Below, one piece after another: positions 7,705-44,588 of a stretch of 64,000 nt of DNA. The position numbers and the translations under genes are program-made. Each line of letters begins with the position of its first letter. Positions within the stretch are counted from its first letter, which is position 1. Below the pieces are notes generated by a model that saw nothing but the letters and a program-made list of their open reading frames with translations, did no database searches and was not told the DNA's origin. The DNA lies in IMG/VR virus record IMGVR_UViG_3300044974_001280, positions 1 to 64,000 of that record; one strand, written 5' to 3'.

Positions 7705-8526
7705 TTGGTTCAAAAAATCTTTTACAACAGTTCAATGCCCAGAGCAGGGTCTACTCTGATCCAAAATATACTGGGTCAGAATCCTCTTATTTACCCAACT
7801 CCAACCTCTGGTGTTTTCGAGATGCTCGCCGGGGCTAGAACAATTTTCACAGATGGTATAGAATTTAAAGCTCAATCGGAACAGGAAATGCTGGAGGGGT
7901 TTAAAGGATTCTTGAAAGGGGGACTTTATGGATTCTATAACAATATTACAGATAAACCTTACGTGATGGAAAAGTGTCGGGGCTGGAATTCGGAATGGGA
8001 GTTTGTGAATGCCTTCGATCCCAATCCAAAGATGATCTGTATGATTAGGGATATTAGGGCGGTCTATGCTTCTTTAGAAAAGAAATTCAGACAACATCCC
8101 CTTTTGGATCATCATCTAGCCAACTGGGGTAATTTGTCTGGAACTACCACCGATAAAAGGATCCAGGTTTGGTCGACTTCTCCGCCTATTGGTCCTTCCA
8201 TGGATAGAATCTACCAAGTTTTGGTCCAAGGGTTGCACGAAAAAATTCTGTTTGTTAAATTTGAAGATCTCTGTCGGGATCCAGAGTTTCAGATGAAAAG
8301 AATTTATGAATATCTCGATCTTGAATTTTTTCATCATGATTTTTACAACATTCCACAAATAACCAAAGAAGACGACCGGTGGTACGGTATTTTTGGAGAT
8401 CACGTCATTAGAAAGGAATTAAAGCCAGTGAGGGATGATTTCAGAGAAGTTTTAGGAACTAATGCCTGTAAATTAATTGAGGACAGCTATGCCTGGTTTT
8501 TTAACGATTTCGAATATCAAAGATGA
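7705..8526 (+). CDS. PAPS-dependent sulfotransferase
   Basis: 5'-PSB loop SMPRAGSTL, 3'-PB motif IRDIRAVYAS, and KFEDLCRDP. Confidence 0.9.
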   Translation: MVQKIFYNSSMPRAGSTLIQNILGQNPLIYPTPTSGVFEMLAGARTIFTDGIEFKAQSEQEMLEGFKGFLKGGLYGFYNNITDKPYVMEKCRGWNSEWEFVNAFDPNPKMICMIRDIRAVYASLEKKFRQHPLLDHHLANWGNLSGTTTDKRIQVWSTSPPIGPSMDRIYQVLVQGLHEKILFVKFEDLCRDPEFQMKRIYEYLDLEFFHHDFYNIPQITKEDDRWYGIFGDHVIRKELKPVRDDFREVLGTNACKLIEDSYAWFFNDFEYQR

Positions 8527-9542
8527 AGGTAGGATATAAAACTTCTTCTGAAATCCAGATCTCTCCCGAGCAAAAAGGAGAGATGAATTTACCCAAAGCG
8601 ACTGCCCGTAATTCAGACACAATAGTATCAATAATCACACAACAACAACAGTCCATGGAACATAAATATTTAGTTTGGCACATCGAAGGAGGTTTGGGTA
8701 AAAATGTTGCGGCTACTTCTCTTCTTTTACCCCTGGTAGAGAGATATCCCGAGAGAAAAATAATTGTGGTGGCTTCTTACCCTGAGGTTTTTTTAAACAA
8801 TCCGAACATCTATCGAGTTTATCGAGTTGGTATGACACCGTATTTTTATGACGATTACATTTTGGGTAAGGACACTTTAGTTTTTCGGCAAGAGCCTTAT
8901 TTTCAAAGCGGGCATATTCTGAAACAGAAACATCTGATTCAAAATTGGGCGGATCTTCTAGGATTAGATCTGGTTCAAAATCCTCTGCCTGATTTGAGAT
9001 TTAATATGGTTCAAAGCCAATTAACGAGCAATTGGAAAAGGGAAAGACCCATCTGTCTTATTCAAACAAACGGAGGACCCTTAGAAAATCAAGCCTACAC
9101 CTATGCCTGGACCCGAGATATTCCTATCGATTGGGCAATCTATCTGGCCAACAAGCTTTCCGACGTGTACCACATCATACAGGTCACTAGACCAGGTTCT
9201 CCTCAAATTCCCGGAGCTGAAGTGATTACTTCTCACTTGACCTCCTCTGATCTTTTTTCGCTCCTCAAAATGTCGGAAAAAAGAATTCTGATCGATTCTT
9301 GTCTCCAGCACGCCGCGGCAGCCTTCGGACTTCATGCTTTTGTTTTTTGGATAGGAACATCACCTGAGAACTTTGGTTACGGCTTGCATACTAACATCAA
9401 AGCCCTCCCACCTACAGGACAAACAAAGATGGTGGACTCTTATCTCTTCGATTATTCTTTTGACGGCGTTCTACACGAATGCCCCTATCAAAACGTGAAT
9501 GATATGTTTGATCCCACCCACTTAGAACAGATCTTTGTATGA
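8523..9542 (+). CDS. GT9-like (heptosyltransferase-fold) glycosyltransferase
   Basis: GGLGK N-terminal loop, EVFLNNP and IDSCLQHAAAA motifs. Confidence 0.7.
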   Translation: MKVGYKTSSEIQISPEQKGEMNLPKATARNSDTIVSIITQQQQSMEHKYLVWHIEGGLGKNVAATSLLLPLVERYPERKIIVVASYPEVFLNNPNIYRVYRVGMTPYFYDDYILGKDTLVFRQEPYFQSGHILKQKHLIQNWADLLGLDLVQNPLPDLRFNMVQSQLTSNWKRERPICLIQTNGGPLENQAYTYAWTRDIPIDWAIYLANKLSDVYHIIQVTRPGSPQIPGAEVITSHLTSSDLFSLLKMSEKRILIDSCLQHAAAAFGLHAFVFWIGTSPENFGYGLHTNIKALPPTGQTKMVDSYLFDYSFDGVLHECPYQNVNDMFDPTHLEQIFV

Positions 9543-10000
9543 TCTATTGGTTTACCGGTCAGCCGGGGGCTGGAAAAACAACCCTGGCCAAAGCTTTGAA
9601 GGAGACTTTGGAAATGCAAAACTCGAAAGAGGTAATGCACATTGATGGGGATGATATTCGATCCATCTTTAACAACACAGATTACAGCAGAGCTGGACGA
9701 GAAAAAAACATTCAATTAGCTCAACAGATTTCTCATTTTTTATCTATCAAGGGTCTGGATGTTGTGGTTAGTCTGGTGTCACCTTATTTGGAACAGAGAG
9801 AAGAGTTCAAAAAAAGGATGGGCTCCTCCTTGCAAGAAATTTACGTGCACACAACTGAAATCAGAGGCAGAGAAAAATTCCACGTCGAAGACTACGAAAA
9901 ACCTGAAACTAATTTTATTGAAGTAGATACTACTAATACTTCTATCATCTCAAGTCTAAATCAATTCTATGACCAAAAAATTTTCCCTTTTCATCGGTAG
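9539..10000 (+). CDS. cysC: Adenylyl-sulfate (APS) kinase, compact form
   Basis: WFTGQPGAGKTT, IDGDDIR, DYSRAGREKNI, VSPY and YEKP motifs. Confidence 0.9.
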   Translation: MIYWFTGQPGAGKTTLAKALKETLEMQNSKEVMHIDGDDIRSIFNNTDYSRAGREKNIQLAQQISHFLSIKGLDVVVSLVSPYLEQREEFKKRMGSSLQEIYVHTTEIRGREKFHVEDYEKPETNFIEVDTTNTSIISSLNQFYDQKIFPFHR

Positions 10001-10325
10001 GTGGCAGCCTTTACACGAGGGACATAAACATATTTTTAATGAGAGATTAAAATTAGGTAAGAATGTCTGGATAGCTATTCGAGATGTTACGCCCGATGAA
10101 AACCAACCCTGGACTGCTTCAGAAATCAAAGACAATATAGAAAAAATTTACTCTCGGGAAATCTCGGAGGGAAGGATTATTGTTACCATAGTTCCTGATA
10201 TTGAATCTATTAACTATGGTAGAGGAGTAGGCTATGAGATTATAGAACACGTGGTCCCAGCTGAAATTGCTTCTATTTCTGCTACCAGCATCAGAGAACA
10301 GATGAGAAAAGAAGGAACTTTATAG
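9969..10325 (+). CDS. HxGH-family nucleotidyltransferase (cytidylyltransferase-like)
   Basis: FIGRWQPLHEGH and ISATSIR motifs. Confidence 0.8.
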   Translation: MTKKFSLFIGRWQPLHEGHKHIFNERLKLGKNVWIAIRDVTPDENQPWTASEIKDNIEKIYSREISEGRIIVTIVPDIESINYGRGVGYEIIEHVVPAEIASISATSIREQMRKEGTL

Positions 10326-10334: not shown

Positions 10335-10607
10335 ATGAACCAAGAATCTAAACTAACACCAGAAGAGTTAGAAAAAATCATCACTCTTAGAGACAGCATT
10401 AGAACCAATGTTGAAAAAATTGGCAAGATGAACATCCAAAAATACTTCCTTCAAAAGGAACTGGATTTTGTCAATGAACAATTGTCTGCCCTTTATGACG
10501 AAAGCATGACCCTGTCAGAGCAGGAAAAGGCATCGATTCAAGAAATTGTTACAAAATACGGCGAGGGTCAATTAGATTTCTCAACAGGAGTTTACTCTAA
10601 GTCATAA
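10335..10607 (+). CDS. Small coiled-coil hypothetical protein
   Basis: Heptad-rich, ending YGEGQLDFSTG. Confidence 0.65.
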   Translation: MNQESKLTPEELEKIITLRDSIRTNVEKIGKMNIQKYFLQKELDFVNEQLSALYDESMTLSEQEKASIQEIVTKYGEGQLDFSTGVYSKS

Positions 10608-10609: not shown

Positions 10610-11674
10610 ATGACTCCAGTAGAGGTTCTCAGAAGTACCAAAAGGCATCTATTAAAATCCCTGTGGGAAGTTCAAAAGGCACTGGATGAAGCTACCAATT
10701 CACAATTGAGAATTCTTTACGTGGCCCCTCATCTTTCTACAGGAGGTATGCCACAGTACCTATATAAACTCATTGAAATTTTCAATACCCAGGCGGATGT
10801 TTACTGTTTAGAATACAGCAACATCTCTGACGAGTACGTCGTGCAAAGAAACAAAATTCAAAAATTACTAGGCAGCAGATATTACCGGATAGACGATCAC
10901 GAGGACAAGAGTCAGTTTTTGCAAATTCTAGACGAGATCTGTCCAGATGTCATTCATTTTCAAGATTTTGTAGAATTCTTTTTGGATAGGAAAATCTGCG
11001 AACACGTCTATGCCTACAATCGGCCCTGGTACATCATGGAAACCCCTCACTCTTCGGCCAATGTACCGAGTGACAAATATTGGTTACCTGACAAACTAGT
11101 TATGGTCAATCAGTGGATGGCGGATAAATTTTCCGACTGTGGCATTCCGACCGATGTTTTAGAATACCCTATTGAGCATTTTGAAAGAAGAATCTCCCGA
11201 TCAGAAGCCCAAGGAATCCTGGGTTTAGACCCTGGAAAGAAACACGTTATCAATGTCGGTCTTTTCACTCCGGGAAAAAATCAAGGTGAACTGATATCCT
11301 TTGCTAGCCAGATGTTGGATTTGCCCGTTGAGTTTCATTTCATCGGCAACACGGCAGTTAATTTTCAAGAATATTGGCAGCCTCTCGTTTCAAATCTTCC
11401 TGAAAACTGTCGTGTGTGGGGAGAAAGAGGGGACGCCGAAATTTTTTATCAAGCGGCAGATCTGTTTGTTTTTAATTCAACTTGGGAACTGAATCCAATT
11501 GTTATTAAAGAATGTCTTTCTTGGCAACTTCCGATCCTCATGAGACGTCTGACCTCATACGGTGATTTCTACGACACTGATCCCTTAGTAACTTATTTAG
11601 AAGAAGGAACTACAGGCTTGGATTTTGAAACAAATCTTGATAGACTAAAAAATTTAGTGCAGCCAGAATCATGA
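10610..11674 (+). CDS. GT4-family glycosyltransferase
   Basis: PHLSTGGMPQY, VGLFTPGKNQ and ADLFVFNSTWELNPIVIKE motifs. Confidence 0.85.
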   Translation: MTPVEVLRSTKRHLLKSLWEVQKALDEATNSQLRILYVAPHLSTGGMPQYLYKLIEIFNTQADVYCLEYSNISDEYVVQRNKIQKLLGSRYYRIDDHEDKSQFLQILDEICPDVIHFQDFVEFFLDRKICEHVYAYNRPWYIMETPHSSANVPSDKYWLPDKLVMVNQWMADKFSDCGIPTDVLEYPIEHFERRISRSEAQGILGLDPGKKHVINVGLFTPGKNQGELISFASQMLDLPVEFHFIGNTAVNFQEYWQPLVSNLPENCRVWGERGDAEIFYQAADLFVFNSTWELNPIVIKECLSWQLPILMRRLTSYGDFYDTDPLVTYLEEGTTGLDFETNLDRLKNLVQPES

Positions 11675-12855
11675 AAAACAGAGGTATCAAAGTTTACACC
11701 GAGGTAATCAGACAGAAAAAATCCAGAGTTCCTGATCAAACGGGTTTTGTATTCACCTTTGATTATGGACCAAAAGTGGTGATGAGTGGTAATAATCCAG
11801 AGCTCAAAAGAACCGTTAAGTTTTGGGACAAAAAAAATTCTAAATACGAGTATATTGGTGAAATACAGCCTGGTCTTTTTACAACTTTGTTTAGAAAATG
11901 GTATACCCCCTGGGTAGCTGAAATTTTTGATGGAGAAGAAAAGATTTGGTCGTATGATTTCGAGGAAAATCTCAAGGGCCAAAAAATTTTAGTATCTATT
12001 GACAGTGCCTCTATAGGAGATACTCTAGCCTGGATGCCTGTTATAGCTAAATTTGGTCAAAAGCACGAAGCTGAACTACTGGTCAGTACTTTTTGGAATC
12101 CTCTTCTATCTAATTTTTTTGAGAGCATTCAATTCGTAAATCCTGGCTATCGTCATCCCTCCATTCACAGCATTTTCGGAATTGGTTGGTACGAGGAGGA
12201 CGATAGATACAAACACCCCAGAGATCCAAGAACCATTTCTCTCCAGCACGTGGCTTCGGATCTTCTAGGGATCGAAGAGACCTCAGAATTGCTGATGCCT
12301 AACATCTCAGCCCAACTGGGATCTCAGCCTCGTCCTATCGAAGAAAAATATGTTTGTATAGCAACTGAATCGACAGCTAACGCAAAACATTGGCACTATC
12401 CTGGAGGATGGCAAGAGATAGTTAATTATTTAAGAGAACTCGGTTACAAGGTTGTAGTAATTCATGAACAAGCCAACAGATTAGAAAATGTAGAGGATCG
12501 CACTGGTTCAATTGATCTTTGGGAAAGAATGGTAATGCTGCATCACGCAGAGTTTTTTATTGGGATAGGGTCTGGAATTTCTTGGTTGTCCTGGGCGGTG
12601 AACGTTCCTGTCGTCATGATCTCTGGATTTTCTCTCCCTTTTTGTGAATTTTCCACCCGAAATTATCGGGTGATAAATCCCCATGTGTGTCACGGATGTT
12701 TCAACGATCCAAGATTTAAATTCGATAAAGGAGACTGGAACTGGTGTCCTAAATTAAAAAACACGGAGAGAATTTTTGAGTGTACGCGTCAGATCACTCC
12801 TGGAATGGTTAAAGAGGCCATTCACAATCTAATTCAAGATATTTCTCAGGGCTAA
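11671..12855 (+). CDS. Autotransporter strand-loop-strand O-heptosyltransferase (TibC/Aah, BAHT family)
   Basis: SIGDTLAW catalytic-loop motif, GIGSGISWLSW, VMISGFS, and a four-Cys Fe site (CHGC...WCP...FECT). Confidence 0.85.
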   Translation: MKNRGIKVYTEVIRQKKSRVPDQTGFVFTFDYGPKVVMSGNNPELKRTVKFWDKKNSKYEYIGEIQPGLFTTLFRKWYTPWVAEIFDGEEKIWSYDFEENLKGQKILVSIDSASIGDTLAWMPVIAKFGQKHEAELLVSTFWNPLLSNFFESIQFVNPGYRHPSIHSIFGIGWYEEDDRYKHPRDPRTISLQHVASDLLGIEETSELLMPNISAQLGSQPRPIEEKYVCIATESTANAKHWHYPGGWQEIVNYLRELGYKVVVIHEQANRLENVEDRTGSIDLWERMVMLHHAEFFIGIGSGISWLSWAVNVPVVMISGFSLPFCEFSTRNYRVINPHVCHGCFNDPRFKFDKGDWNWCPKLKNTERIFECTRQITPGMVKEAIHNLIQDISQG

Positions 12856-34563: not shown

Positions 34564-34923
34564 ATGTCGAAGATCTATGTAACTAATCAAAATCTGATGG
34601 AGGCAATTCTTGAATCTAAAGAGAAGGGAGAATTAACACCAGCAGCCATAGAAATGTTCACTCTGATGATCTCGGGCATTTCTAAAAAAATGTCTTATAA
34701 GGATCCTGATGATAAAGATGATTGTATGGCTTTTGCCATGGAGGATCTTTGCAAATATTGGAATAGATTCGACCCAGAAAAATCCAACAATCCTTTTTCC
34801 TATTACACCCAAATAGCCAAAAATGGGTTTGCAAAAGGCTGGAAAAAAATACATCCCCCCAAATCACCTAAGACTATTCCTTTTTCTCACATCACGGGAG
34901 AAGATAATTCTTATAATGTGTAA
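34564..34923 (+). CDS. gp55: Late-transcription sigma factor (T4 gp55-like), minimal
   Basis: YVTN...FDPEKSNNPFSYYTQIA motif. Confidence 0.85.
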   Translation: MSKIYVTNQNLMEAILESKEKGELTPAAIEMFTLMISGISKKMSYKDPDDKDDCMAFAMEDLCKYWNRFDPEKSNNPFSYYTQIAKNGFAKGWKKIHPPKSPKTIPFSHITGEDNSYNV

Positions 34924-35405
34924 TGACTGATATCAAAAAAATCAAGCCAAATGGCAATTTTAAATCTGGCGTATTTGCCCCTTTAAATCCAGAAAAATAC
35001 ATCGGAGATATCAATAACATCATTTGCAGATCAAGCTGGGAATACAGGTTCTGTAAATACTGTGATTCGAATCCACTGATTTTAAAATGGTCTTCTGAGC
35101 CCCTGCCAATTCCTTACTACAACCCTTTAGATCAGAAAGATCATAAATATCATGTTGACTTTTACATGAGGGTCCAGCAGGAAAACGGGGAACAGCAGGA
35201 ATGGCTTATCGAGGTAAAGCCCCAGAGACAGCACGAAAAACCAGTTTTCGAAGGAAGCAAAACCAACGAAAAATTGAAATCCTACAACGATAAGATGAAA
35301 GTCTGGATCACCAATCAGGCTAAATTTAAAGCGGCAAAAATCTGGGCAGAAGCGAGAGGAATGAAATTTGGAGTAGTAAACGAGAATTTCCTATTTAACA
35401 AGTAA
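34923..35405 (+). CDS. gp4: Head completion nuclease (T4 gp4-like)
   Basis: NPEKYIGD, RSSWE, WSSE..IPY, Y.VDF, IEVKP and NQAK motifs. Confidence 0.9.
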   Translation: MTDIKKIKPNGNFKSGVFAPLNPEKYIGDINNIICRSSWEYRFCKYCDSNPLILKWSSEPLPIPYYNPLDQKDHKYHVDFYMRVQQENGEQQEWLIEVKPQRQHEKPVFEGSKTNEKLKSYNDKMKVWITNQAKFKAAKIWAEARGMKFGVVNENFLFNK

Positions 35406-35440: not shown

Positions 35441-35448
35441 GATATATA
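35441..35448 (+). promoter_or_regulatory. Putative late promoter GATATATA
   Basis: Recurrent motif. Confidence 0.7.
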
Positions 35449-35506
35449 CTTGCTGTAAATCGAAATAAAATTCACGTCGGTGGTAAAAAGGAGGAATAGT
35501 TTCTAA

Positions 35507-37111
35507 ATGGCAGGTTTTAGCGAGAATCCAAACACCAATCCAATCTTTCAGAAGATTAGGGATTCGGTTAAAAATCTGAGTAATTTCGGGATCCGATATG
35601 GTGACATGGTTGTCAAAAATTCTCAGGCTATTGGGGCCACTGAAGCTGAATTTTTGAAAAAAGGACCTATTGAGGATGAAACCACCTTCTTTTCTTTAGG
35701 TCGCCAAGACACAACCACCAGGCAGTATATTTCTTATTTTGATAAAGACTATGCGGGAAAAAGAGATTATCTGAGAAAATTCTCTTTGAACCCTGAGATA
35801 GAATACATTTTAGACACTGTCTGTGATGAATCTATTACTTACGATTCTTATAATTTCTTTGCCTATCCAGCTTTTCTGAACCTATCTAATCTTAAAAAGT
35901 CCGTTATCGATCGCATCGATTCGACTTATAAGAAACTGTATGACATGTTCGGTTTCAACGATGACATTTCGGCCTGGCAGTATTTCAGGCAAATGCTGGT
36001 GGATGGATTTATTGCCTTTGAGATTGTCTTTGATGATAGCGGCAGAAACATCATCGGATTTAAAGAGCTAGATGCCACGACCCTCATGCCTTCTGTGGAA
36101 AAACAGAAAGACGGAACTTTTTTGAATGTTTGGTATCAATACCCTAAAGATGAAAGAAAAAGAAGAATGTTGTACGACTCTCAGGTCATCTACATTTCTT
36201 ACGCCAAAGGCAATTCTATTTCTAGAGTTAGCTACACAGAAAGACTGATTAGACCTTACAATGTCTTGAGAATTATCGAATACACCAGAGTTATTTGGTC
36301 GGTCATGAATGCTTCTTTTAGGATGAAGATGACCATTCCGGTGGGATCTAGATCCCAACAGAAAGCAATGCAAACTCTGGGAGAATTGATGTCTATCTAC
36401 AAAGAGGACATCCAGTTTAACGACGAGAGTGGAGAACTTTCTGTTAACGGCCAACCCAAGATTCAGTTCTATAAGAACTATCTAATGCCCAAAGGAGCAG
36501 GAGGCACCCCTTCTATTGAGCCTCTAAACACGGCAGGCCCCAATCTGAATGATCCTGCCCCATTAGCCTATTTTTTCGATAAATTAGTGCAGGAATCAAA
36601 AATTCCTTTTTCCCGGTTTCAGGGGCCTGATGGCGGATCTATTGGAAAATACGCTAATGCTGCCGAAGGTTTAGATAAAGAAGAAATCAGATTCTCTAAA
36701 TTTATTATGAGGCTTAGATCTGTATTTCAGGATATCCTGGTTAAGCCTCTATGGATTCAAATCTGTAAAGATTTTCCCCAACTAGAAAAGGATTACACTT
36801 TTAAATCCCAATTAGGTCTAAGCTATGTTTCAGATAACCCCTTCCGGGTTAACCAGGAGATTGAAACCATTACGAAGAGAAAAGAATTTATAGATTCTCT
36901 TTATACCCTCACCGACGAGGAAGGAAATCCTTTCTTTTCTATCTCATATCTAGTGGAAAACTACATGGGTCTTACTGAGGATGATATAGCTTCTAATAAA
37001 AAAGCCAGAAGTGATAACAAATTAAAATCTGCTGAAGAAGCTGCGGCTGCCAGCGCATCTCCGCCAGCGGGCGAGTCCGAGCCAGAAGTAGCACCAGAAA
37101 CCCCAGTATAA
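35507..37111 (+). CDS. Portal protein (gp20-like), paralog 1
   Basis: EIEYILDTVCDE, WQYFRQMLVDG, SY.ERLIRPYN.LR, KIPFSRF and EEIRF.KFI.RLR motifs. Confidence 0.85.
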   Translation: MAGFSENPNTNPIFQKIRDSVKNLSNFGIRYGDMVVKNSQAIGATEAEFLKKGPIEDETTFFSLGRQDTTTRQYISYFDKDYAGKRDYLRKFSLNPEIEYILDTVCDESITYDSYNFFAYPAFLNLSNLKKSVIDRIDSTYKKLYDMFGFNDDISAWQYFRQMLVDGFIAFEIVFDDSGRNIIGFKELDATTLMPSVEKQKDGTFLNVWYQYPKDERKRRMLYDSQVIYISYAKGNSISRVSYTERLIRPYNVLRIIEYTRVIWSVMNASFRMKMTIPVGSRSQQKAMQTLGELMSIYKEDIQFNDESGELSVNGQPKIQFYKNYLMPKGAGGTPSIEPLNTAGPNLNDPAPLAYFFDKLVQESKIPFSRFQGPDGGSIGKYANAAEGLDKEEIRFSKFIMRLRSVFQDILVKPLWIQICKDFPQLEKDYTFKSQLGLSYVSDNPFRVNQEIETITKRKEFIDSLYTLTDEEGNPFFSISYLVENYMGLTEDDIASNKKARSDNKLKSAEEAAAASASPPAGESEPEVAPETPV

Positions 37112-37116
37112 TAGAC

Positions 37117-38742
37117 ATGGCAGGATTTTTAGATAATGCTCAGGAAAAATCTTTTTTGGGGGTTCTGTACAGAAACCTCGGAAAGATTAGTAAATTCGGG
37201 ATGCAATATGAAGATATGGTTATCCGTAATTCTCAGGCCATTGGTGCTACCGAATCGACCTTTTTTAACAATCAAGGCACTGGTTTTACCGAAAATGATG
37301 CCTTTTTCTGGACTTTAGGTTACCAGGATACCAGAATCAGAAAATACATCGCCTATTTTGATAAGGATTATCTTGGTAAAAGAGAATTCCTTCGCAAATT
37401 TGCTCTCAACGGAGAAATAGATTTCATTCTAGACACCGTTACTGATGATGCGATAAACTACGATGACAAGAATTTTTTCTGCTACCCCAGTTTGGTGAAT
37501 ATTGAGCTGAAAGACAACGTCAGGGAGAGAGTGGAAGAAAATTTTAGAACCTTATATAATCTTTTTGGCTTTCAACAAAGCATTCTGGCTTGGCAGTACT
37601 TCAAGCAGTTTTTGGTTGATGGTTTTTTGGCTTTTGAGATTGTTTATTCTACAGATGGCAAGAAAATAGTTGGATTCAAAGAACTAGACGCCACCTCACT
37701 TCAGCCGGCCACTGAAAAACAGCCCAACGGGGAATTCCAACAAATTTGGATCCAATATCCTCAGGACAACCGAATGACCAGAAAGCTGAAATCGGAACAG
37801 GTTATTTACTTGTCTTACGCCAAGGGCAATGCTGTCTCCAGAGTTAGCTACACAGAAAGGCTCATTCGTTCCTATAACATTTTAAGGGTGATGGAAAATA
37901 CGAGAGTTATTTGGAATGTCATGAATGCATCCTATCGACTGAAGTTCATTATCCCTGTTGGTACTCAATCCATGCAAAAAGGCATGCAGACTCTTGGTCA
38001 ATTGATGTCCCAGTACAAGGAGGAGATCCAGATCAACGACACTTCGGGGGAACTAACGGTCAATGGTGCACCCAGAGTCCAGTTTTATAAAAACTATCTG
38101 TTCCCTGAGAAGGACGGCGAATCTCCTGATATTAGCACACTCAACCCCAGCGGACCGGATTTTAACGTGATGGAAAATGTTGTTTATTTTTACAACAAAT
38201 TGAAGTTGGATTCTAAAATCCCTTACGCCAGGTTTTCAGCCAGATCCGGAACCCCTGCTAATTATCAGATTAGCATAGATCAGTTGGAGAGGGACGAAAT
38301 TCGATATGAAAAATTTGTAACTCGTCTGAGATCTGTTTTCCAGGAGATCCTAGTTAAACCTCTTTATATCCAAATGTGTCTAGATTTTCCTGTTTTGTCA
38401 AAGGATCGTACTTTTAAGGTAAATTTGGGTTTAGATTATGTGAAGGAAAATGTCTTCGAACAAATGATTCAGTTGTCCAACTATTCCAAGAGAGCATCTT
38501 TTATTTCCAGCATGGGTGAGATAAAAATGAAAGTGGGGGAAGAGGAATTACCCTATTTTGACAAAGAATGGCTTATCAAAAGATGGCTGGGTCTTAGTAT
38601 GGATGAATACAGGATGAACGAAAAGTACAAGAAGGAAGAGAAGGAAGAAGCAGATAAATTAAAGAAAGATCAAGAGAAAGAAGGAGAGAAGAAAGGAGAA
38701 GGGGGAGAGGGACAAGCAGAAACACCTAGTTTTACCCTATAA
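37117..38742 (+). CDS. Portal protein (gp20-like), paralog 2
   Basis: Same motif set, collinear with paralog 1. Confidence 0.85.
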   Translation: MAGFLDNAQEKSFLGVLYRNLGKISKFGMQYEDMVIRNSQAIGATESTFFNNQGTGFTENDAFFWTLGYQDTRIRKYIAYFDKDYLGKREFLRKFALNGEIDFILDTVTDDAINYDDKNFFCYPSLVNIELKDNVRERVEENFRTLYNLFGFQQSILAWQYFKQFLVDGFLAFEIVYSTDGKKIVGFKELDATSLQPATEKQPNGEFQQIWIQYPQDNRMTRKLKSEQVIYLSYAKGNAVSRVSYTERLIRSYNILRVMENTRVIWNVMNASYRLKFIIPVGTQSMQKGMQTLGQLMSQYKEEIQINDTSGELTVNGAPRVQFYKNYLFPEKDGESPDISTLNPSGPDFNVMENVVYFYNKLKLDSKIPYARFSARSGTPANYQISIDQLERDEIRYEKFVTRLRSVFQEILVKPLYIQMCLDFPVLSKDRTFKVNLGLDYVKENVFEQMIQLSNYSKRASFISSMGEIKMKVGEEELPYFDKEWLIKRWLGLSMDEYRMNEKYKKEEKEEADKLKKDQEKEGEKKGEGGEGQAETPSFTL

Positions 38743-38752
38743 ATTTCAATGA

Positions 38753-39751
38753 ATGAATTTACTAAAATTATTTTCCACCCAAAGGATCTTGGTGGTTGGA
38801 GATTCGATTCTAGATCACTATGTCTATGGTAAAGTTCACCGGGTTTCCCCTGAGGCACCAGTCCCGGTTGTTCTCAAGAACAGAGAAGAGTATTTTCTAG
38901 GAGGAGCGGCAAACGTGGCTCAGAACATCACCGCCTTCGGAGCTAAGTGTACCCTGTTGTCCTTGATAGGGCCCGACGTCGAAAGCAAAATTCTTTTGCA
39001 AAAATGCCTGGATGAAAACATCGAGCCTCTTTTTATTGAAGAAAGAGGAAGACCGACAACCAAAAAAACAAGAGTTTTAGGCAATAGACATCAGATTGTT
39101 AGAATCGATGTGGAAGAATCCAGAGATTTATCTTTGGGCTCCAGTTTAAAAATCATGAAAATTTTCGAAGAACAAATTCAATCCCACGATGGGGTCATTT
39201 TCCAAGATTACGGTAAAGGACTATTTACAAATTCCCTTCTGAATCAGCTTGTTCAGATTTGTCAAAAACACGACAAAAAGATTCTGGTGGATCCTAAAGA
39301 GCCAGATCTTTTTCGCTACCAAGGTGCCTGTTTTATCAAGCCCAATCTGGCAGAGTTCAAAGCCATGTTAAAACTAAAGACCGAGGATGAATTAGAAATC
39401 CATCAAATCTCTGATTATGCCCAACGAGCCCTGGAAGAATTTGATTATAATTTCTTTTTGATCACTCTGTCTGAACGGGGTATTTTATTAGTGGGCAGAG
39501 ACTTTTCCCGACATCTCCCAGGTATCAATGTGGATGTCTCGGATGTGTCAGGAGCAGGAGACACAGTTTCTGCTGTTTTTGGTTTGGGTTTTTTCTCTAG
39601 CCTTAAAAATCCAAAGCCTGGACTGGAGCTACACCACATAGCCGAACTGTCCAATTTGGCTGGATCTCTGGTGTGCAGACACTCTGGAGCGGTTCCTGTT
39701 GATCCTGAAGAATTACAAAAATTATTTGAAAAAAGTTCGTTTTTTTCCTGA
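38753..39751 (+). CDS. rfaE: D-glycero-D-manno-heptose-7-phosphate kinase (RfaE/HldE domain I, PfkB fold)
   Basis: VGD.ILDHY.YG...RVSPEAPVPV, GGAANVA, DYGKG, VDPK, KPN and DVSGAGDT motifs. Confidence 0.9.
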   Translation: MNLLKLFSTQRILVVGDSILDHYVYGKVHRVSPEAPVPVVLKNREEYFLGGAANVAQNITAFGAKCTLLSLIGPDVESKILLQKCLDENIEPLFIEERGRPTTKKTRVLGNRHQIVRIDVEESRDLSLGSSLKIMKIFEEQIQSHDGVIFQDYGKGLFTNSLLNQLVQICQKHDKKILVDPKEPDLFRYQGACFIKPNLAEFKAMLKLKTEDELEIHQISDYAQRALEEFDYNFFLITLSERGILLVGRDFSRHLPGINVDVSDVSGAGDTVSAVFGLGFFSSLKNPKPGLELHHIAELSNLAGSLVCRHSGAVPVDPEELQKLFEKSSFFS

Positions 39752-39780
39752 ATGGATTTTTTTTCTACGCAGTTTAGTTC

Positions 39781-39788
39781 TACATTTA
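39781..39788 (+). promoter_or_regulatory. Near-consensus Bacteroidota -7 element (TACATTTA)
   Basis: One mismatch to TAnnTTTG; ends 5 nt before the ATG. Confidence 0.35.
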
Positions 39789-39792
39789 CATC

Positions 39793-41130
39793 ATGATAAA
39801 CGAACTAAAAATCCTCTCCACCCTTGAATCCCTCACGGGCAACGGGTCCCAAAAAGAGAAGCAAAGACTTCTTTCCGAAAATCTCACCGAAGTAATGTCT
39901 TACTTGCTGGATGTGTGCTTCAATCCATTTGTGACTACTAAGTTACACAAGCTGGATCTACAGCCAACCCCGACAGGGGAATTTCCTGGTTTCGAGACCT
40001 TTAAATCCGTAATGGAAAACTTGAAATCGGCCCCGGCTGCCAACGACAACCTTAGAGGTCAAGCCACATCACTCATCAATTCCCGTCTTTCAGAAGATCC
40101 AATCGAAGACAAACAGCTTCGGGAAATTCTAATGAAGATTTTTACCAAAAGAATGAACTCCGGAATTGGTGCCAAACTCATCAACAAAGCTTTAGGTACA
40201 GAGCTAATTCCGGACCCATCTTTGATGCTGGCCACTGATGATCAAAAGGAAGTTCTGGACTGGGATAAGATCTATTGTGAAGAGAAATATGACGGGGTAA
40301 GAGTAATAGCAGTTGGTGATAAAGATAAGGGATTCCAATTTTACACCAGAGCCTTTAACGAGTTGGATAAAAGCAGACTTTCTTCTATCGAACGGGATTT
40401 GATTCAAATCTTACACAATGCTAATATCGTAGGGGAGATATTTTTTGATGGTGAATTGACAGACCTAAATAGAAAGTCGGTTTCAGGAAAGGTAACACAA
40501 ATTCTGAAGGGCACAGCACCCAAGGATATAGATAAGGAATTCATGTTCAACGTGTTCGACATAGAAAAGGCCTCAGTGCTCAAAATTGGCAATGGAACCA
40601 CCCCCTTTCTCAAAAGAAGAAAAGAACTGGAATTCTTAACTTCCTTTCTGTCCCCTAATTCCCAGGTTAAACTTGCTCGTCAGTGGGTAGTTGATTCAAT
40701 GGAGGAAACCCAAAAGATTTATGGTCTAATCATTTCTATGGGTGGAGAAGGGGTCATTCTAAAACCAGGTAATCACGTGTACGAGTGTAAACGAAGTAGA
40801 AGCTGGGTTAAATTGAAGCAAGTCCAAGATTGTGATTTGGAAATCATCGGTTGGTATCCAGGAGAAGGTAAGAGAGAGGGATTGATCGGGGGTTTCATTT
40901 GTACCGATGCTTCCAGAACTTTACAAGTAAAAATAGGATCTGGATTTACCGATGCCGATTTAAAAACTCTCAGTTCCAATCCAGATCAATTCATTGGTCG
41001 GGTTGCTGCCGTTCAATTCAACGAGCCCATCACAGACAAATTTGGCAATCGGAGCTTATTTCTTCCCCGTTTCATCGAAGTTAGATCCGATAAGAATCAA
41101 GCTGATGATATGTCCCCCTTTTTCAAATAG
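39793..41130 (+). CDS. lig: ATP-dependent DNA ligase
   Basis: EEKYDGVR, DGEL, EGVILK, WVKLK, GSGF and LFLPRF motifs. Confidence 0.95.
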   Translation: MINELKILSTLESLTGNGSQKEKQRLLSENLTEVMSYLLDVCFNPFVTTKLHKLDLQPTPTGEFPGFETFKSVMENLKSAPAANDNLRGQATSLINSRLSEDPIEDKQLREILMKIFTKRMNSGIGAKLINKALGTELIPDPSLMLATDDQKEVLDWDKIYCEEKYDGVRVIAVGDKDKGFQFYTRAFNELDKSRLSSIERDLIQILHNANIVGEIFFDGELTDLNRKSVSGKVTQILKGTAPKDIDKEFMFNVFDIEKASVLKIGNGTTPFLKRRKELEFLTSFLSPNSQVKLARQWVVDSMEETQKIYGLIISMGGEGVILKPGNHVYECKRSRSWVKLKQVQDCDLEIIGWYPGEGKREGLIGGFICTDASRTLQVKIGSGFTDADLKTLSSNPDQFIGRVAAVQFNEPITDKFGNRSLFLPRFIEVRSDKNQADDMSPFFK

Positions 41131-41133
41131 GAG

Positions 41134-41161
41134 GAAACAAATCTTTGACTTTTTTGTAAAA
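41134..41161 (+). promoter_or_regulatory. Putative ECF-type promoter
   Basis: GAAAC-N17-GTAAAA. Confidence 0.6.
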
Positions 41162-41175
41162 AGACAAAGACAAAT

Positions 41176-42126
41176 ATGGTCAACCAACTTCTTACTGAAA
41201 AGCTCAGGCCCCGGGAGCTAAAACACATGATTCTTCCTGAAAGGATCCGGGTTCTCTTCGAAAATAAACCCTTGAGCCAAAATTTACTTCTGGCGGGTTC
41301 TCCTGGGTGTGGCAAAACAACACTCGCCAAAATTTTAGCTACTGGATCTCCCTATTTGTTCATCAATGTTTCCGACGAAAGCTCTGTTGATGTTATCAGA
41401 ACAAAGATCAACGACTTTTGTTCTACCCTCAGTGTGATGGATGGCAAATCAACCTTTAAAGTTGTCATTCTGGACGAGTTTGATGGAGCATCGGATCAGT
41501 TCTATAAAGCTCTCAGAGGAACCATTGAGAAATTTGCCAAAAACGCCAGATTTGTAGCTACCTGTAATTGGATTACGAAGGTTCCTGATGCTATTCAATC
41601 TAGATTTGAAGTCATTAATTTTGACCCAGTTAACCAGCAGGAAGAAGATCAATTGAAGTCAGAATGGAAAGCCAGAATATCTTTGATCCTCTCCAAATTA
41701 AACATCCAGATTCAGCCCGATGCCTTGGATGTCTTTGAAAGAGACTATTTTCCGGATTTAAGATCTGCCTTGAATAAAATTCAATCTTGGTCTATCGAAG
41801 GAATCTCTGAAGTTGATGCCAAAAAAATCCAGGACACTGCTTTTTCCTATGAAGAGCTCTATCAGTTAATTTGTTCCTCTCAGGATCCGATCAAAAATTA
41901 TCAGTTTGTGATCGGTCAATATTCTGGTAAAGTTGACACAGTCATGCAGGCTCTGGGCAGTGAATTTATCAATTGGTTGATTCGGCATAGACCTGAATTA
42001 TCCAAGACTATCCCCATGATTTTAGTCATGGTGGCAGAACACCAGGCCCAAAGATCATCAGTGATAGATCCTATCGTCTCTCTTTTGGCTCTAATCTTCA
42101 AAATACAGAAACAAATACAAGCCTAA
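41176..42126 (+). CDS. gp44: Sliding clamp loader AAA+ subunit (gp44/RFC-like)
   Basis: EKLRP, GSPGCGKTT, ILDEFD, QSR and PDLR motifs. Confidence 0.92.
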   Translation: MVNQLLTEKLRPRELKHMILPERIRVLFENKPLSQNLLLAGSPGCGKTTLAKILATGSPYLFINVSDESSVDVIRTKINDFCSTLSVMDGKSTFKVVILDEFDGASDQFYKALRGTIEKFAKNARFVATCNWITKVPDAIQSRFEVINFDPVNQQEEDQLKSEWKARISLILSKLNIQIQPDALDVFERDYFPDLRSALNKIQSWSIEGISEVDAKKIQDTAFSYEELYQLICSSQDPIKNYQFVIGQYSGKVDTVMQALGSEFINWLIRHRPELSKTIPMILVMVAEHQAQRSSVIDPIVSLLALIFKIQKQIQA

Positions 42127-42431
42127 TGGAATTATTACCAGAAGAAATACGAAAAGGCAGCTACATGTACAGGCTGGTAAAGAGAGGAAAAAAAGCTCTG
42201 TGGTACGAGCAATTTTGTTTGGACTCTGAAAAAATCGTTGCCTGGGAGGTTTTCAAAATAAAAATAGATCCGCCTAAAGAACTTTTTGGAGTTCAGATGG
42301 GGGAAAGGGAGATTTTTCCAGGTAATGAAGATTTTGGCAAATGGGCTTGGGCACCTTTCAATTTCGATATAGCTGCCACTTATTACGAAAGATTAGAACA
42401 AGGTTTGCACCCTAAAGATTGCGAGATTTAA
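42126..42431 (+). CDS. Hypothetical protein
   Basis: Coupled ORF; E.FP..EDFGKWAW motif, family not named. Confidence 0.65.
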   Translation: MELLPEEIRKGSYMYRLVKRGKKALWYEQFCLDSEKIVAWEVFKIKIDPPKELFGVQMGEREIFPGNEDFGKWAWAPFNFDIAATYYERLEQGLHPKDCEI

Positions 42432-42440
42432 TAAAATTTT

Positions 42441-43019
42441 ATGAGACAGTCCCAGTACGACAAGGAATTTCCTATATACAATTACACCTTTTTCCAAAAA
42501 CCAATCAAGAGGCTGATTATCTGTGGACCCGGTGGATCTGGTAAGGACTATTACCGCTATCATCTACAAAAAAAGGGATTCAAATATTCCATCCCCTGGA
42601 CTTCTAGACCTATCAGGCTTGGGGAAGTGCAAGGAGTAGATTACTTTTTTGTCTCTCCTGAAGAAGCTTCTGCTGCTATTGCCCAGGAATCTTTTTACGA
42701 GTATAATTTTTTTGCTAGCTGGTTTTACGGAACACCTAAAGCCGAATTTTATGCTAGTAATTTATTCATTATGACCCCTTCTGGAATTGCCAAGCTCCAT
42801 CAAAAAGACAGGTCAGAGTCCTTTATTCTGTACTTGGATATAGATCTGGAGGTTCGTCGAGCTAGGATGCAAAATAGAAATGATGCCGATTCCGTGGAGA
42901 GAAGACTTAAAACAGACAGTGAGGATTTTTCAGATTTCGTGAATTTTGATTTGTCAATTACAGATCCCTCCTATAAAATAACTGACGAAATTTGGTCAGA
43001 CCCTTCCTACTATAAATAA
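42441..43019 (+). CDS. gmk: Guanylate kinase-like protein
   Basis: GPGGSGKD, TSRPIRLGEVQGVDYFFV and YGT motifs. Confidence 0.85.
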   Translation: MRQSQYDKEFPIYNYTFFQKPIKRLIICGPGGSGKDYYRYHLQKKGFKYSIPWTSRPIRLGEVQGVDYFFVSPEEASAAIAQESFYEYNFFASWFYGTPKAEFYASNLFIMTPSGIAKLHQKDRSESFILYLDIDLEVRRARMQNRNDADSVERRLKTDSEDFSDFVNFDLSITDPSYKITDEIWSDPSYYK

Positions 43020-43024
43020 AAAAT

Positions 43025-44176: not shown

Positions 44177-44588
44177 GCTAGTTAAATCGGTTTTTAAATC
44201 CGACGAAGAGTGGAAAAAGGTGCCAAGAAGTGTGAAGACAAAACATTTTTTCATGGTTAATAGAATTATGTCCATCCAGTTTCCGATTCATGCCCATCTA
44301 TTTAACCACTCCAAGATCGAAATGGTGCCAGTAGTGGATTGGTGGCACGGATTTTTATGCAATGCTTTTAAAAAACCACCCACCTGGATCTATACAACTG
44401 GACCTAAAAAAAATGCGGTTCAGGCAGTAGAGAAAAATCATGACACAGAAGAATTCATTAGAACCAAATACGAATTAAGCTCCAGGGATCTGAAACAGCT
44501 CCAGACCTTTTACCCTGAATCTTACTCCCAGTGGATGGACTCAATCTCTGACCAATTGGGAAGAAATAAAAAACAATCGGATATATAA
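44163..44588 (+). CDS. Possible clamp loader small subunit (gp62-like)
   Basis: FMVNRIMS resembles the gp62 core; near gp44. Confidence 0.4.
   Translation: MDLFELVKSVFKSDEEWKKVPRSVKTKHFFMVNRIMSIQFPIHAHLFNHSKIEMVPVVDWWHGFLCNAFKKPPTWIYTTGPKKNAVQAVEKNHDTEEFIRTKYELSSRDLKQLQTFYPESYSQWMDSISDQLGRNKKQSDI
44580..44587 (+). promoter_or_regulatory. Putative late promoter GATATATA
   Basis: Recurrent motif. Confidence 0.65.

What the first reader, a model, noticed from the sequence alone, without database searches (positions are those of the whole stretch)
38753..39751. Stand-alone heptose-7-phosphate kinase behind the portal genes
Seen: an RfaE/HldE domain I kinase starts 10 nt after portal 2, with no terminator between them. 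Known: it catalyses step 2 of ADP-heptose synthesis. Inference: it is probably on the late portal transcript and supplies donor sugar to the two heptosyltransferase-like genes about 26-30 kb upstream. This independently supports heptose as the transferred sugar.
Basis: partly seen in the sequence, partly recalled or inferred. Interest (0 to 1): 0.65.

Follow-up and report, generated by a model that had tools for sequence, protein, structure and literature searches.

The report
Lone heptose kinase behind phage portals
A large lake-water phage carries a single, intact enzyme of the ADP-heptose sugar pathway right behind its two portal genes. It always occurs together with a phage enzyme that attaches heptose to proteins, so the phage probably boosts the host's heptose supply to sugar-coat something of its own.

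Summary
ORF 38753-39751 (+, 332 aa) is an HldA/RfaE-domain-I type heptose-7-phosphate kinase. It starts 10 nt after the second of two T4-type portal genes, and all catalytic motifs are intact. It is under purifying selection (dN/dS about 0.08).

- Co-transcription with the portals is inferred, not shown. A strongly over-represented late-promoter-like motif (RATATATA) sits before portal 1, and none follows until 44.58 kb. The same layout holds in relatives. No RNA data exist.
- The link to heptosyltransferases is supported. ORF 11671-12855 is a genuine TibC/Aah-type protein O-heptosyltransferase (BAHT) with all key residues. ORF 8523-9542 has a GT9 fold.
- All 13 related phage records that have the kinase and cover the region have the BAHT. 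So does an unrelated 735-kb phage that carries such a kinase.
- The reverse does not hold. BAHT occurs without the kinase in at least three phages, and 33 of 80 related loci lack the kinase. It is an optional booster.
- No gmhA, gmhB, hldC or hldD is found in the 230-kb record, so the host must supply the other steps.

The acceptor protein and the host are unknown. The kinase is a new member of a known kind; the phage heptosylation module is the more novel part.

The parts
38753..39751 (+). [quoted passage not shown]
   Evidence: TIGR02198 scores 303 bits (cut-off 345); PfkB 107 bits; the best PDB match is HldA 4e84. The motifs RVSPEAPVPVV, LGGAANVA, KPNLAE (NxxE) and DVSGAGDT are intact. dN/dS is 0.08 against a 97% variant.
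38743..38752 (+). 10-nt spacer between the portal 2 stop and the kinase start
   Evidence: Read directly from the sequence. The spacer is 9-12 nt in all 34 related loci with a full-length kinase, at 43-100% kinase identity.
37117..38742 (+). Portal paralogue 2 (T4 gp20 type)
   Evidence: Portal_T4, E 3.3e-60; 52% identical to portal 1.
35507..37111 (+). Portal paralogue 1 (T4 gp20 type)
   Evidence: Portal_T4, E 3.2e-62.
35441..35449 (+). Late-promoter-like motif (G/A)(G/A)ATATATA, 59 nt before portal 1. It is the nearest such motif upstream of the kinase.
   Evidence: RATATATA occurs 17 times in the window, all on the + strand, against 3.0 expected; 0 of 100 shuffles reach 17. It precedes the neck, sheath, tube, portal and prohead-protease genes. 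The next site downstream is at 44580. A motif about 1.7 kb upstream of portal 2 is conserved in relatives, with none between portal 2 and the ligase.
39752..39792 (+). 41-nt spacer between kinase and DNA ligase, with an A/U-rich hairpin
   Evidence: The fold is -14.5 kcal/mol, z -1.07 against shuffles, and is not a canonical terminator. No promoter-like motif is present.
39793..41130 (+). ATP-dependent DNA ligase, the downstream neighbour. It follows portal 2 directly in relatives that lack the kinase.
   Evidence: DNA_ligase_A_M, E 1e-19. The portal 2 to ligase gap is 34-39 nt in 32 kinase-less loci and 106 nt in one (L040).
11671..12855 (+). BAHT: TibC/Aah-type protein O-heptosyltransferase (394 aa, P0125), the presumed consumer of ADP-heptose
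   Evidence: TIGR04414 scores 300 bits (cut-off 200); TibC 4rb4 E 4e-64. The equivalents of TibC D110, T226, K230, R286, W305 and Cys339/342/358/370 are all conserved, and the P300 position is Gly.
10610..11674 (+). GT4 glycosyltransferase, overlapping the BAHT start by 4 nt and conserved with it
   Evidence: Glycos_transf_1. It is conserved next to BAHT in 9 of 10 relatives and fused to BAHT in one 769-aa protein in G006.
10335..10607 (+). Conserved 90-aa ORF heading the orf90-GT4-BAHT block
   Evidence: Present at 43-53% identity in all 10 relatives examined. No family match.
8523..9542 (+).
   Evidence: No Pfam, NCBIfam or PDB sequence match. The AlphaFold model (pLDDT 72.6) best matches GT9 3tov (E 2e-11), WaaF 1psw, WaaC and TibC. 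It is absent from the 10 relatives examined.
9969..10325 (+). 118-aa minimal nucleotidyltransferase (HEGH and SATSIR motifs), the only conceivable phage substitute for HldC
   Evidence: CTP_transf_like, 26 bits. The best NCBIfam matches are NMN adenylyltransferases, with no rfaE_dom_II match. It overlaps the APS kinase gene and is absent from relatives.
34564..34923 (+). Small sigma-70 region-2-only protein, a candidate late sigma factor (gp55-like)
   Evidence: Sigma70_r2, 22 bits, below the cut-off. The same weak hit appears at the same position in relatives.

Best explanation
The gene encodes an active, stand-alone HldA-type kinase. [quoted passage not shown] It was acquired once by this lineage of freshwater jumbo phages (distant relatives of the Lak/huge-phage group). 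It was inserted at the module boundary between the duplicated portal genes and the DNA ligase. It is probably transcribed from the late-type promoter in front of portal 1, so it is made while virions are built. Because the phage has no GmhA, GmhB, HldC or HldD, the host must supply the other steps, and the kinase only raises flux through the committed ATP-dependent step. The extra ADP-heptose most likely feeds the phage's own conserved GT4 + BAHT pair, which sits next to the neck and terminase genes, and in this phage also a GT9-fold enzyme. These enzymes would O-heptosylate a phage protein that has not been identified. The kinase is a dispensable booster: related phages keep the BAHT without it. 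Shown: gene identity, intact motifs, purifying selection, synteny, and co-occurrence. Inferred: substrate, timing of expression, the link to BAHT, the acceptor, and the host.
For: Identity: TIGR02198 303 bits against 58 bits for the next kinase family, and HldA 4e84 at E 5.7e-46. All 61 columns that are invariant across 18 phage and cellular HldA homologues are, by construction of that list, kept by the window protein. They include the SPEAPVP lid, the R100/T102/T103/K105/R107 cluster, NxxE and GAGD. Selection: 29 synonymous against 9 non-synonymous changes versus a 97% variant, dN/dS 0.08, similar to the ligase (0.06) and the AAA ATPase (0.07). One origin: 13 full-length phage kinases form one clade (SH-aLRT 100). 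They always sit 9-12 nt after portal 2, even at 43-49% identity. Timing: the promoter-like motif is 5.6-fold over-represented, occurs only on the + strand, and precedes structural genes. One stands before portal 1 and none before 44.58 kb. The pattern is conserved in relatives. Consumer: the BAHT is above its curated cut-off with all TibC functional residues, and P0124 has a GT9 fold. Co-occurrence: BAHT is found in 13 of 13 related records that carry the kinase and cover the region. The 735-kb phage LR756501 also has the kinase (306 bits) plus BAHT (307 bits), and it too lacks gmhA and hldC. Pathway context: stand-alone GmhA, GmhB-like and HldC genes exist in 9-10 of 10 Bacteroidota genomes that carry similar stand-alone kinases.
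Against: The kinase misses the curated equivalog cut-off (303 against 345 bits), and no activity has been measured. No RNA data exist, and other promoter classes were not modelled. The genes that would share the transcript are DNA-metabolism genes, which are not typical late genes. BAHT occurs without the kinase in G006 (a GT4-BAHT fusion, in a fragment only), LR756504 and Mel-JY01. 33 of 80 related loci have no kinase at this site. The co-occurrence is largely one phylogenetic lineage, so it amounts to about two independent observations. T4-like cyanophages carry distant kinase-like genes without any BAHT. The kinase lies 26 kb from the BAHT. No acceptor has been identified: the giant repeat fibre next to the sugar cluster is found only in the closest relatives. 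The record is about 85% complete, so missing pathway genes could lie in the unseen 15%. The host is unidentified and the kinase tree does not name a donor.
Confidence: 0.55

Rival explanations
1. The kinase remodels the host envelope rather than phage proteins. It would raise ADP-heptose for host LPS core or capsule during infection, for example to keep the outer membrane intact, to mask receptors or to exclude superinfecting phages. This is what is usually proposed for the LPS-type genes of T4-like cyanophages.
For: T4-like cyanophages carry kinase-like genes next to nucleotidyltransferase and phosphoheptose isomerase genes and have no BAHT. So phage heptose-pathway genes do exist without protein heptosyltransferases. 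The phage depends on host enzymes for the rest of the pathway, so the product enters the host pool. BAHT-bearing phages can do without the kinase.
Against: Among this lineage and the huge phages examined, every genome with this kinase type also has a BAHT. The cyanophage proteins are only 25-31% identical and are differently organised. The gene's placement after the portal genes, downstream of a late-type promoter motif, suits virion assembly better than early host takeover.
Confidence: 0.22
2. The protein is a diverged pfkB kinase with another substrate, such as another sugar phosphate or a nucleoside. It would serve the nucleotide and DNA-metabolism genes that follow it (ligase, clamp-loader-like ATPase, guanylate kinase, 5'-3' exonuclease).
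For: It scores below the curated equivalog threshold. Its downstream neighbours are DNA and nucleotide enzymes. The phage clade sits on a long stem of 1.59 substitutions per site. Five relatives carry a shortened 256-aa variant at the same site.
Against: The score for the heptose kinase family is five times that of any other kinase family. The HldA-specific SPEAPVP lid and the basic R/T/K cluster are invariant. In relatives without the kinase the ligase simply abuts portal 2, which marks the kinase as an insertion at a module boundary and not part of the replication block.
Confidence: 0.1
3. The kinase is a passenger gene with no role in the phage: a recently captured host gene that is decaying or neutral.
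For: It is absent from 33 of 80 related loci and is shortened in 5. It diverges faster than its neighbours: 43-49% identity where portal 2 is about 80% and the ligase 56-76%.
Against: dN/dS is about 0.08. Catalytic motifs are intact in all full-length copies. The gene forms a single clade, is retained at one site across deep divergence and is found in at least 20 lake metagenome runs. No cellular homologue is closer than about 44%.
Confidence: 0.05

Closest known systems
[quoted passage not shown] Burkholderia cenocepacia HldA, PDB 4e84) and the N-terminal kinase domain of E. coli HldE/RfaE
   Same: Same pfkB fold family and the same length as stand-alone HldA. It is the best structural relative (E 5.7e-46). 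The SPEAPVP lid, GG, NxxE and DVSGAGD motifs are conserved.
   Different: It is encoded by a phage, about 40-44% identical to the nearest cellular proteins, and below the curated equivalog cut-off (303 against 345 bits). It has a 7-9 residue insertion after the GAGD helix in this sub-clade. No pathway partners are encoded in the same genome.
Heptose/LPS-type auxiliary genes of T4-like cyanophages (e.g. P-SSM2, S-SSM7, S-CAM1: 'putative carbohydrate kinase' next to a nucleotidyltransferase and a phosphoheptose isomerase)
   Same: A phage-borne pfkB kinase of the HldE-like kind, in a large myovirus with a T4-type portal.
   Different: The cyanophage proteins are only 25-31% identical and shorter. 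They sit beside nucleotidyltransferase and GmhA-like genes, as annotated in those records. No BAHT homologue was found in any Synechococcus or Prochlorococcus phage record. Here the kinase is the only pathway enzyme and it co-occurs with a BAHT.
TibC/Aah bacterial autotransporter heptosyltransferases (BAHT family; Yao et al. 2014, PMC4358343)
   Same: The phage ORF 11671-12855 is above the family cut-off. It keeps the catalytic Asp, the ADP-heptose-binding Thr/Lys/Arg/Trp and the four iron-finger cysteines. These enzymes use ADP-heptose, the end product of the pathway in which the kinase acts.
   Different: It is encoded in a phage next to neck and terminase genes, and is paired or fused with a GT4 enzyme. 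There is no autotransporter substrate. The stereoselectivity position (Pro in TibC, Ser in Aah) is Gly. The acceptor is unknown.
Huge phage LR756501/LR756503 (735 kb, metagenomic)
   Same: It carries an HldA-type kinase (306 bits, 38% identical) and a BAHT (307 bits) but no gmhA or hldC. Its portal is distantly related (34%).
   Different: The kinase and BAHT lie about 370 kb apart, in a genome three times larger. The kinase is not known to be adjacent to a portal gene.

Membership tests
HldA / RfaE domain I heptose-7-phosphate kinase (TIGR02198) | Whole-protein score at or above the curated equivalog cut-off (345 bits) | tested here: not met
   303.3 bits, E 1.7e-90, covering profile positions 3-313 of 315. 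The same value was obtained in the genome search.
HldA / RfaE domain I heptose-7-phosphate kinase (TIGR02198) | Ribokinase/pfkB catalytic motifs: GG dipeptide, NxxE, and DxxGAGD with the catalytic Asp | tested here: met
   LGGAANVA, KPNLAE and DVSGAGDT are present and invariant across phage and cellular homologues.
HldA / RfaE domain I heptose-7-phosphate kinase (TIGR02198) | Subfamily-specific N-terminal R(V/I)SPEAPVP segment and a conserved basic R/T/K cluster | tested here: met
   RVSPEAPVPVV at residues 30-40. R100, T102, T103, K105, R107, R117, D119 and E121 are invariant columns in alignment A2. That these residues bind the heptose phosphate is my inference; it was not checked against a ligand-bound structure.
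HldA / RfaE domain I heptose-7-phosphate kinase (TIGR02198) | The closest solved structure is an HldA | tested here: met
   4e84 (B. cenocepacia HldA) at E 5.7e-46. The next match (sugar kinase PH1459) is at E 3.8e-07.
HldA / RfaE domain I heptose-7-phosphate kinase (TIGR02198) | [quoted passage not shown] | not testable with these tools
   This needs an enzyme assay or complementation.
Bifunctional HldE (kinase + adenylyltransferase) | C-terminal cytidylyltransferase-like adenylyltransferase domain (rfaE domain II) | tested here: not met
   The protein is 332 aa and its HldE match covers only positions 5-313 of 475. No TIGR02199 match at E <= 1 anywhere in the 230-kb record.
Complete phage-encoded ADP-heptose pathway | gmhA, gmhB, hldC (and hldD) in the same genome | tested here: not met
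   No match for SIS_2, TIGR00441, TIGR00213, TIGR02199 or Epimerase in the record, which is about 85% complete. The two CTP_transf_like hits are an NMNAT-like 118-aa protein and an RNA-ligase-like 649-aa protein.
BAHT (TibC/Aah protein O-heptosyltransferase, TIGR04414), for ORF 11671-12855 | Score above the curated cut-off; catalytic Asp; ADP-heptose-binding Thr, Lys, Arg and Trp; four iron-finger Cys | tested here: met
   300.4 bits against a cut-off of 200. D117, T235, K239 and the Arg and Trp equivalents are present, and the C-x2-C...C...C pattern aligns to TibC Cys339/342/358/370. The residue roles come from PMC4358343.
BAHT (TibC/Aah protein O-heptosyltransferase, TIGR04414), for ORF 11671-12855 | A beta-helical autotransporter substrate encoded nearby; dodecameric assembly | tested here: inconclusive
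   There is no autotransporter. A giant repeat fibre (1-4878) lies upstream but is found only in the closest relatives. The oligomeric state cannot be tested here.
GT9 heptosyltransferases, for ORF 8523-9542 | Sequence membership in Glyco_transf_9; GT-B fold of the GT9 type | tested here: inconclusive
   No Pfam or NCBIfam match. The predicted fold best matches GT9 3tov (E 2e-11, TM 0.61), WaaF, WaaC and TibC. The Atlas neighbours include a cluster in which 45% of members carry PF01075. Donor sugar is unknown.

The most novel reading that the evidence does not exclude
This lineage of freshwater jumbo phages, and independently a 735-kb huge phage, runs its own protein O-heptosylation system. 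The system consists of a TibC-type BAHT paired or fused with a GT4 enzyme next to the neck and packaging genes, backed by a phage HldA kinase expressed with the portal genes. Virion proteins would then be decorated with heptose-based glycans. That would be the first BAHT-type glycosylation outside bacterial autotransporters, and a new chemistry for phage virion glycosylation. The lone kinase would mark step 2 as the flux-limiting step that phages choose to reinforce.
Probability: 0.4. Interest if true: 0.72.

Novelty: new member of a known kind. Interest (0 to 1): 0.48.

Why it matters
Phage-borne sugar-pathway genes are usually read as host LPS remodelling. Here a lone heptose kinase is tied by genome content to a protein O-heptosyltransferase of the TibC/Aah family, which until now has been described for bacterial adhesins. 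If the link is real, it points to heptose glycans on phage particles, a modification that could affect host recognition, stability or evasion of grazers and defences. It also singles out the kinase step as the control point of ADP-heptose supply. The system is abundant in lakes (20 or more metagenome runs). It is directly testable by heterologous expression in E. coli, which already makes ADP-heptose.

Tried and rejected
- T4-type late promoter TATAAATA. The sequence CTATAAAT overlaps the portal 2 stop just before the kinase, but TATAAAT is not enriched before genes (5 of 31 + strand sites). I dropped it in favour of the strongly enriched RATATATA motif.
- RNA evidence. The look-up of sequencing runs found 20 lake-water DNA runs and no RNA run. 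Read laying was therefore not used, because contigs cannot show transcripts.
- Host identification. There are no tRNA genes. The kinase tree places the phage clade next to a mixed Verrucomicrobiota/Omnitrophota/Nitrospirota group, not inside Bacteroidota, so no donor can be named. Bacteroidota remain only a weak guess. It rests on the rarity of Shine-Dalgarno motifs and on the portal's affinity to Lak/Prevotella and Tenacibaculum phages.
- The 118-aa nucleotidyltransferase as a phage HldC. There is no rfaE_dom_II match, its best matches are NMN adenylyltransferases, it is absent from relatives, and it overlaps the APS kinase gene. This is not supported.
- The 649-aa CTP_transf_like ORF at 126.8 kb as HldC. 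It is RNA-ligase-like. Rejected.
- The giant repeat fibre (1-4878) as the conserved BAHT acceptor. It is present only in the two closest relatives examined, so it cannot be the lineage-wide acceptor. The 849-aa neck-like protein shows no obvious repeat.
- Megablast against GenBank phages found nothing.
- Literature searches found no report of phage BAHTs or of a lone phage HldA.
- The careful tree search did not finish in time, so a quick IQ-TREE tree was used.
- Complex prediction and the large representative search were not used. The family scans left no doubt about identity, and no acceptor candidate justified a complex job.
Full report
**Source**

The window is the first 64 kb of a 230,445-bp IMG/VR virus record. 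The record is linear and CheckV estimates it at about 85% complete. It is 39.8% G+C, has about 273 ORFs of which 253 lie on the + strand, and has no tRNA genes. The same sequence is held almost whole by 20 lake-water metagenome runs, and none is an RNA run. Its portal is most like those of metagenomic huge phages (LR756500 at 45%; LR756504, LR756501 and LR756502 at 34-37%). More distant matches are the Lak phages of Prevotella, Sphingomonas phage PAU and Tenacibaculum phage PTm1.

**Observation**

- ORF 38753-39751 (+) encodes 332 aa.
- It matches PfkB (107 bits) and NCBIfam TIGR02198 rfaE_dom_I at 303.3 bits over 311 of 315 profile positions. The next non-heptose kinase family scores 58 bits, but the curated cut-off of 345 bits is not met.
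- The best solved structure is B. cenocepacia HldA, 4e84 (E 5.7e-46).
- There is no adenylyltransferase domain.
- The two preceding ORFs are both T4 gp20-type portals and are 52% identical.
- Portal 2 stops at 38742 and the kinase starts at 38753, a 10-nt spacer.
- No terminator-like site lies at this junction. Such sites in 31-45 kb are at chance level, and the junction does not fold better than shuffled sequence.

**Is the gene functional?**

- The motifs RVSPEAPVPVV, LGGAANVA, DYGKG, VDPK, KPNLAE (NxxE) and DVSGAGDT are intact. They are invariant across phage orthologues and cellular HldA homologues.
- Against a 97%-identical natural variant there are 29 synonymous and 9 non-synonymous changes. 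That gives dN/dS 0.08, similar to the ligase (0.06) and the AAA ATPase (0.07).

**Comparative genomics of the locus**

Eighty related loci were fetched with portal 2 (73-100% identity).
- 39 have a kinase directly after portal 2. The 34 complete cases show 43-100% kinase identity and a spacer of 9-12 nt.
- 5 have a shortened 256-aa variant (28-29% identity).
- 33 have no kinase. The ligase follows portal 2 after 34-39 nt in 32 of them and after 106 nt in L040.
- 3 are uninformative.

The 13 full-length phage kinases sampled form one clade (SH-aLRT 100) on a long stem. Their sister group is taxonomically mixed, so no donor can be named (quick tree). The nearest cellular proteins are about 40-44% identical, mostly from Bacteroidota. 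The gene is therefore an old, single insertion at the boundary between the portal module and the replication module. It has been retained in part of the lineage and lost or reduced elsewhere.

**Transcription (inferred)**

- A de novo k-mer scan of intergenic DNA found (G/A)(G/A)ATATATA. Of 38 GATATATA sites in the genome, 22 lie in the 3.7% of the genome that is intergenic.
- In the window, RATATATA occurs 17 times, all on the + strand, against 3.0 expected. None of 100 shuffles reaches 17.
- The motif lies mostly 15-30 nt before the starts of the neck-like, tail sheath, tail tube, portal 1 and prohead-protease genes, among others. It is missing from the block of small ORFs at 190-224 kb.
- A small sigma-70 region-2-only protein is encoded at 34564-34923 (below cut-off). 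I read the motif as a late-type promoter, by analogy with T4 gp55 and its TATAAATA promoters. That analogy comes from my own knowledge.
- One motif stands at 35441-35449 before portal 1, and the next is at 44580.
- In every relative with enough sequence, a motif lies about 1.7 kb upstream of portal 2 and none lies between portal 2 and the ligase.
- The kinase-ligase spacer holds only an A/U-rich hairpin that is not distinguishable from shuffles.

So the kinase is probably on the portal transcript. By the same reasoning the ligase, the clamp-loader-like ATPase, the guanylate kinase and the 5'-3' exonuclease would be too. Other promoter classes were not modelled, and no RNA data exist.

**The rest of the pathway**

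- The 230-kb record has no match at E <= 1 to gmhA (SIS_2, TIGR00441), gmhB (TIGR00213), hldC (TIGR02199) or an epimerase/hldD (PF01370).
- Two cytidylyltransferase-like hits exist. One is a 118-aa protein at 9969-10325 with HEGH and SATSIR motifs. Its best matches are NMN adenylyltransferases, it overlaps an APS kinase gene, and it is absent from relatives. The other is a 649-aa RNA-ligase-like ORF at 126.8 kb. Neither looks like HldC.
- The phage therefore needs host GmhA, GmhB and HldC.
- In ten Bacteroidota genomes that carry similar stand-alone kinases, stand-alone HldC (9/10), GmhA (9/10 strong) and GmhB-like genes (9/10, below cut-off) are present. An unbundled host pathway of this kind does exist, but the host of this phage is not known.

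**The consumers**

- ORF 11671-12855 scores 300 bits on TIGR04414 (cut-off 200) and matches TibC at E 4e-64.
- Using the residue roles given by Yao et al. (PMC4358343), these TibC residues all have equivalents: the catalytic Asp110, the sugar-binding Thr226, Lys230, Arg286 and Trp305, and the iron-finger Cys339/342/358/370. The stereoselectivity position (Pro300 in TibC, Ser294 in Aah) is Gly. The choice between ADP-D,D- and ADP-L,D-heptose is therefore open.
- The BAHT overlaps a GT4 gene (10610-11674). The block orf90-GT4-BAHT-neck-like 849 aa-orf300-large terminase is conserved in 9 of 10 relatives examined.
- In G006 the GT4 and BAHT are fused into one 769-aa protein.
- In Microcystis phage Mel-JY01 the BAHT is the C-terminal part of a 1,226-aa protein that is annotated only as an FkbM methyltransferase.
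- ORF 8523-9542 has no sequence-family match. It folds (pLDDT 72.6) into a GT-B structure that best matches GT9 enzymes: 3tov at E 2e-11, then WaaF, WaaC and TibC.
- That ORF belongs to a phage-specific variable cluster not found in the relatives examined. The cluster comprises a GT4, an FkbM methyltransferase, a sulfotransferase, the GT9-fold protein, an APS kinase and the mini nucleotidyltransferase.

**Co-occurrence**

- All 13 related records that carry the kinase (full-length or shortened) and cover the region have a BAHT above the cut-off.
- G006 lacks the kinase at the locus and anywhere in its 51.5-kb fragment, yet it has the GT4-BAHT fusion.
- Among six GenBank genomes, LR756501 has both the kinase (306 bits) and a BAHT (307 bits) and, like this phage, has no gmhA or hldC. 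LR756504 and Mel-JY01 have a BAHT only. Three genomes have neither.
- BAHT homologues occur in only 4 of 50,697 GenBank phage records.
- T4-like cyanophages carry distant kinase-like genes (25-31% identity) beside nucleotidyltransferase and phosphoheptose isomerase genes but no BAHT.

In this clade the kinase implies a BAHT, but a BAHT does not imply the kinase. Because most of the records are kin, this amounts to about two independent observations.

**Conclusion**

The most likely reading (about 0.55) is a late-expressed flux booster for host-dependent ADP-heptose synthesis that serves a phage protein O-heptosylation module. The acceptor is not identified. The giant fibre at 1-4878 is an attractive target in this phage: it has a (GSS)n collagen-like region followed by about 80 copies of a 17-residue repeat. 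It is present only in the closest relatives, however.

The rivals are host LPS or capsule remodelling (0.22), a different kinase substrate (0.10) and a neutral passenger gene (0.05).

The kinase itself is a new member of a known kind, namely phage auxiliary genes for heptose nucleotides. The linked BAHT module in phages appears not to have been described in the literature I could search.

Noticed in passing
window 35507-38742: Two tandem T4 gp20-type portal paralogues, 52% identical. They are conserved as a pair in all related loci looked at. LR756501 also shows two portal-like places. How two portals are used is unexplained.
   Followed up: partly
window, 17 sites (e.g. 12867, 15460, 18236, 21820, 35441, 51431); 48 ATATATA sites in G000: The motif (G/A)(G/A)ATATATA occurs only on the + strand. 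It lies mostly 15-30 nt before structural gene starts and is absent from the small-ORF block at 190-224 kb. It is a probable late promoter. The site at 18236 suggests that the tail sheath gene really starts after it and not at the TTG at 18153.
   Followed up: partly
window 1-4878 (+), open at the record's 5' end: A giant virion fibre-like protein of more than 1,625 aa. It has a (GSS/GTS)n collagen-like region followed by about 80 copies of a 17-residue repeat of the NTAVGxxALxxNTTGxx type, rich in Ser/Thr and N-x-T sites. It sits directly upstream of the sugar-modification cluster. A related protein occurs only in the two closest relatives.
   Followed up: partly
window 7705-10325: A sulfotransferase (7705-8526), an APS kinase (9539-10000) and an overlapping 118-aa HxGH nucleotidyltransferase (9969-10325). 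Together they look like a small PAPS-making and sulfating module, which would point to sulfated glycans. The mini nucleotidyltransferase might act as a sulfate adenylyltransferase, but that is speculation.
   Followed up: no
window 8523-9542 (P0124): This protein belongs to a very large, well conserved family (more than 3,600 proteins at E <= 0.001, 56-66% identity among the top hits, freshwater and marine, one from Tara) with no Pfam domain and 'hypothetical' names. The model shows a GT9-type GT-B fold.
   Followed up: partly
L129 8500-10809 (G006); L218 4750-8430 (Microcystis phage Mel-JY01, PP395634.1): BAHT domains fused to partners: GT4-BAHT (769 aa) in G006, and a 1,226-aa protein in a cultured Microcystis phage that is annotated only as 'methyltransferase FkbM'. 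Mel-JY01 is a cultured system in which phage BAHT function could be tested.
   Followed up: partly
L067-L069, L075, L076 (e.g. L067 7627-8397): Five relatives carry a shortened 256-aa kinase-like gene at the same site. It has the PEAPVP and DVSGAGDT motifs but lacks profile positions 65-94, and the GG dipeptide is replaced by GM. It sits on a very long branch. Its function is unclear.
   Followed up: no
window 34564-35405: A sigma-70 region-2-only protein of 119 aa (a weak hit) is immediately followed by a TnsA-like endonuclease (E 1.5e-18). Both are conserved upstream of the portals in relatives.
   Followed up: no
G000 126811-128760 (L003 61-2010): A 649-aa ORF combines a weak RNA-ligase-like region with a cytidylyltransferase-like segment. 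Mel-JY01 has a 639-aa 'cytidylyltransferase like protein' near its BAHT.
   Followed up: no
window 39793-44176 and relatives L005/L006: Downstream of the kinase lies a DNA-metabolism block: ATP-dependent ligase, clamp-loader-like AAA, guanylate kinase and 5'-3' exonuclease. Relatives also have UvdE and Fpg/Nei-type repair genes.
   Followed up: no
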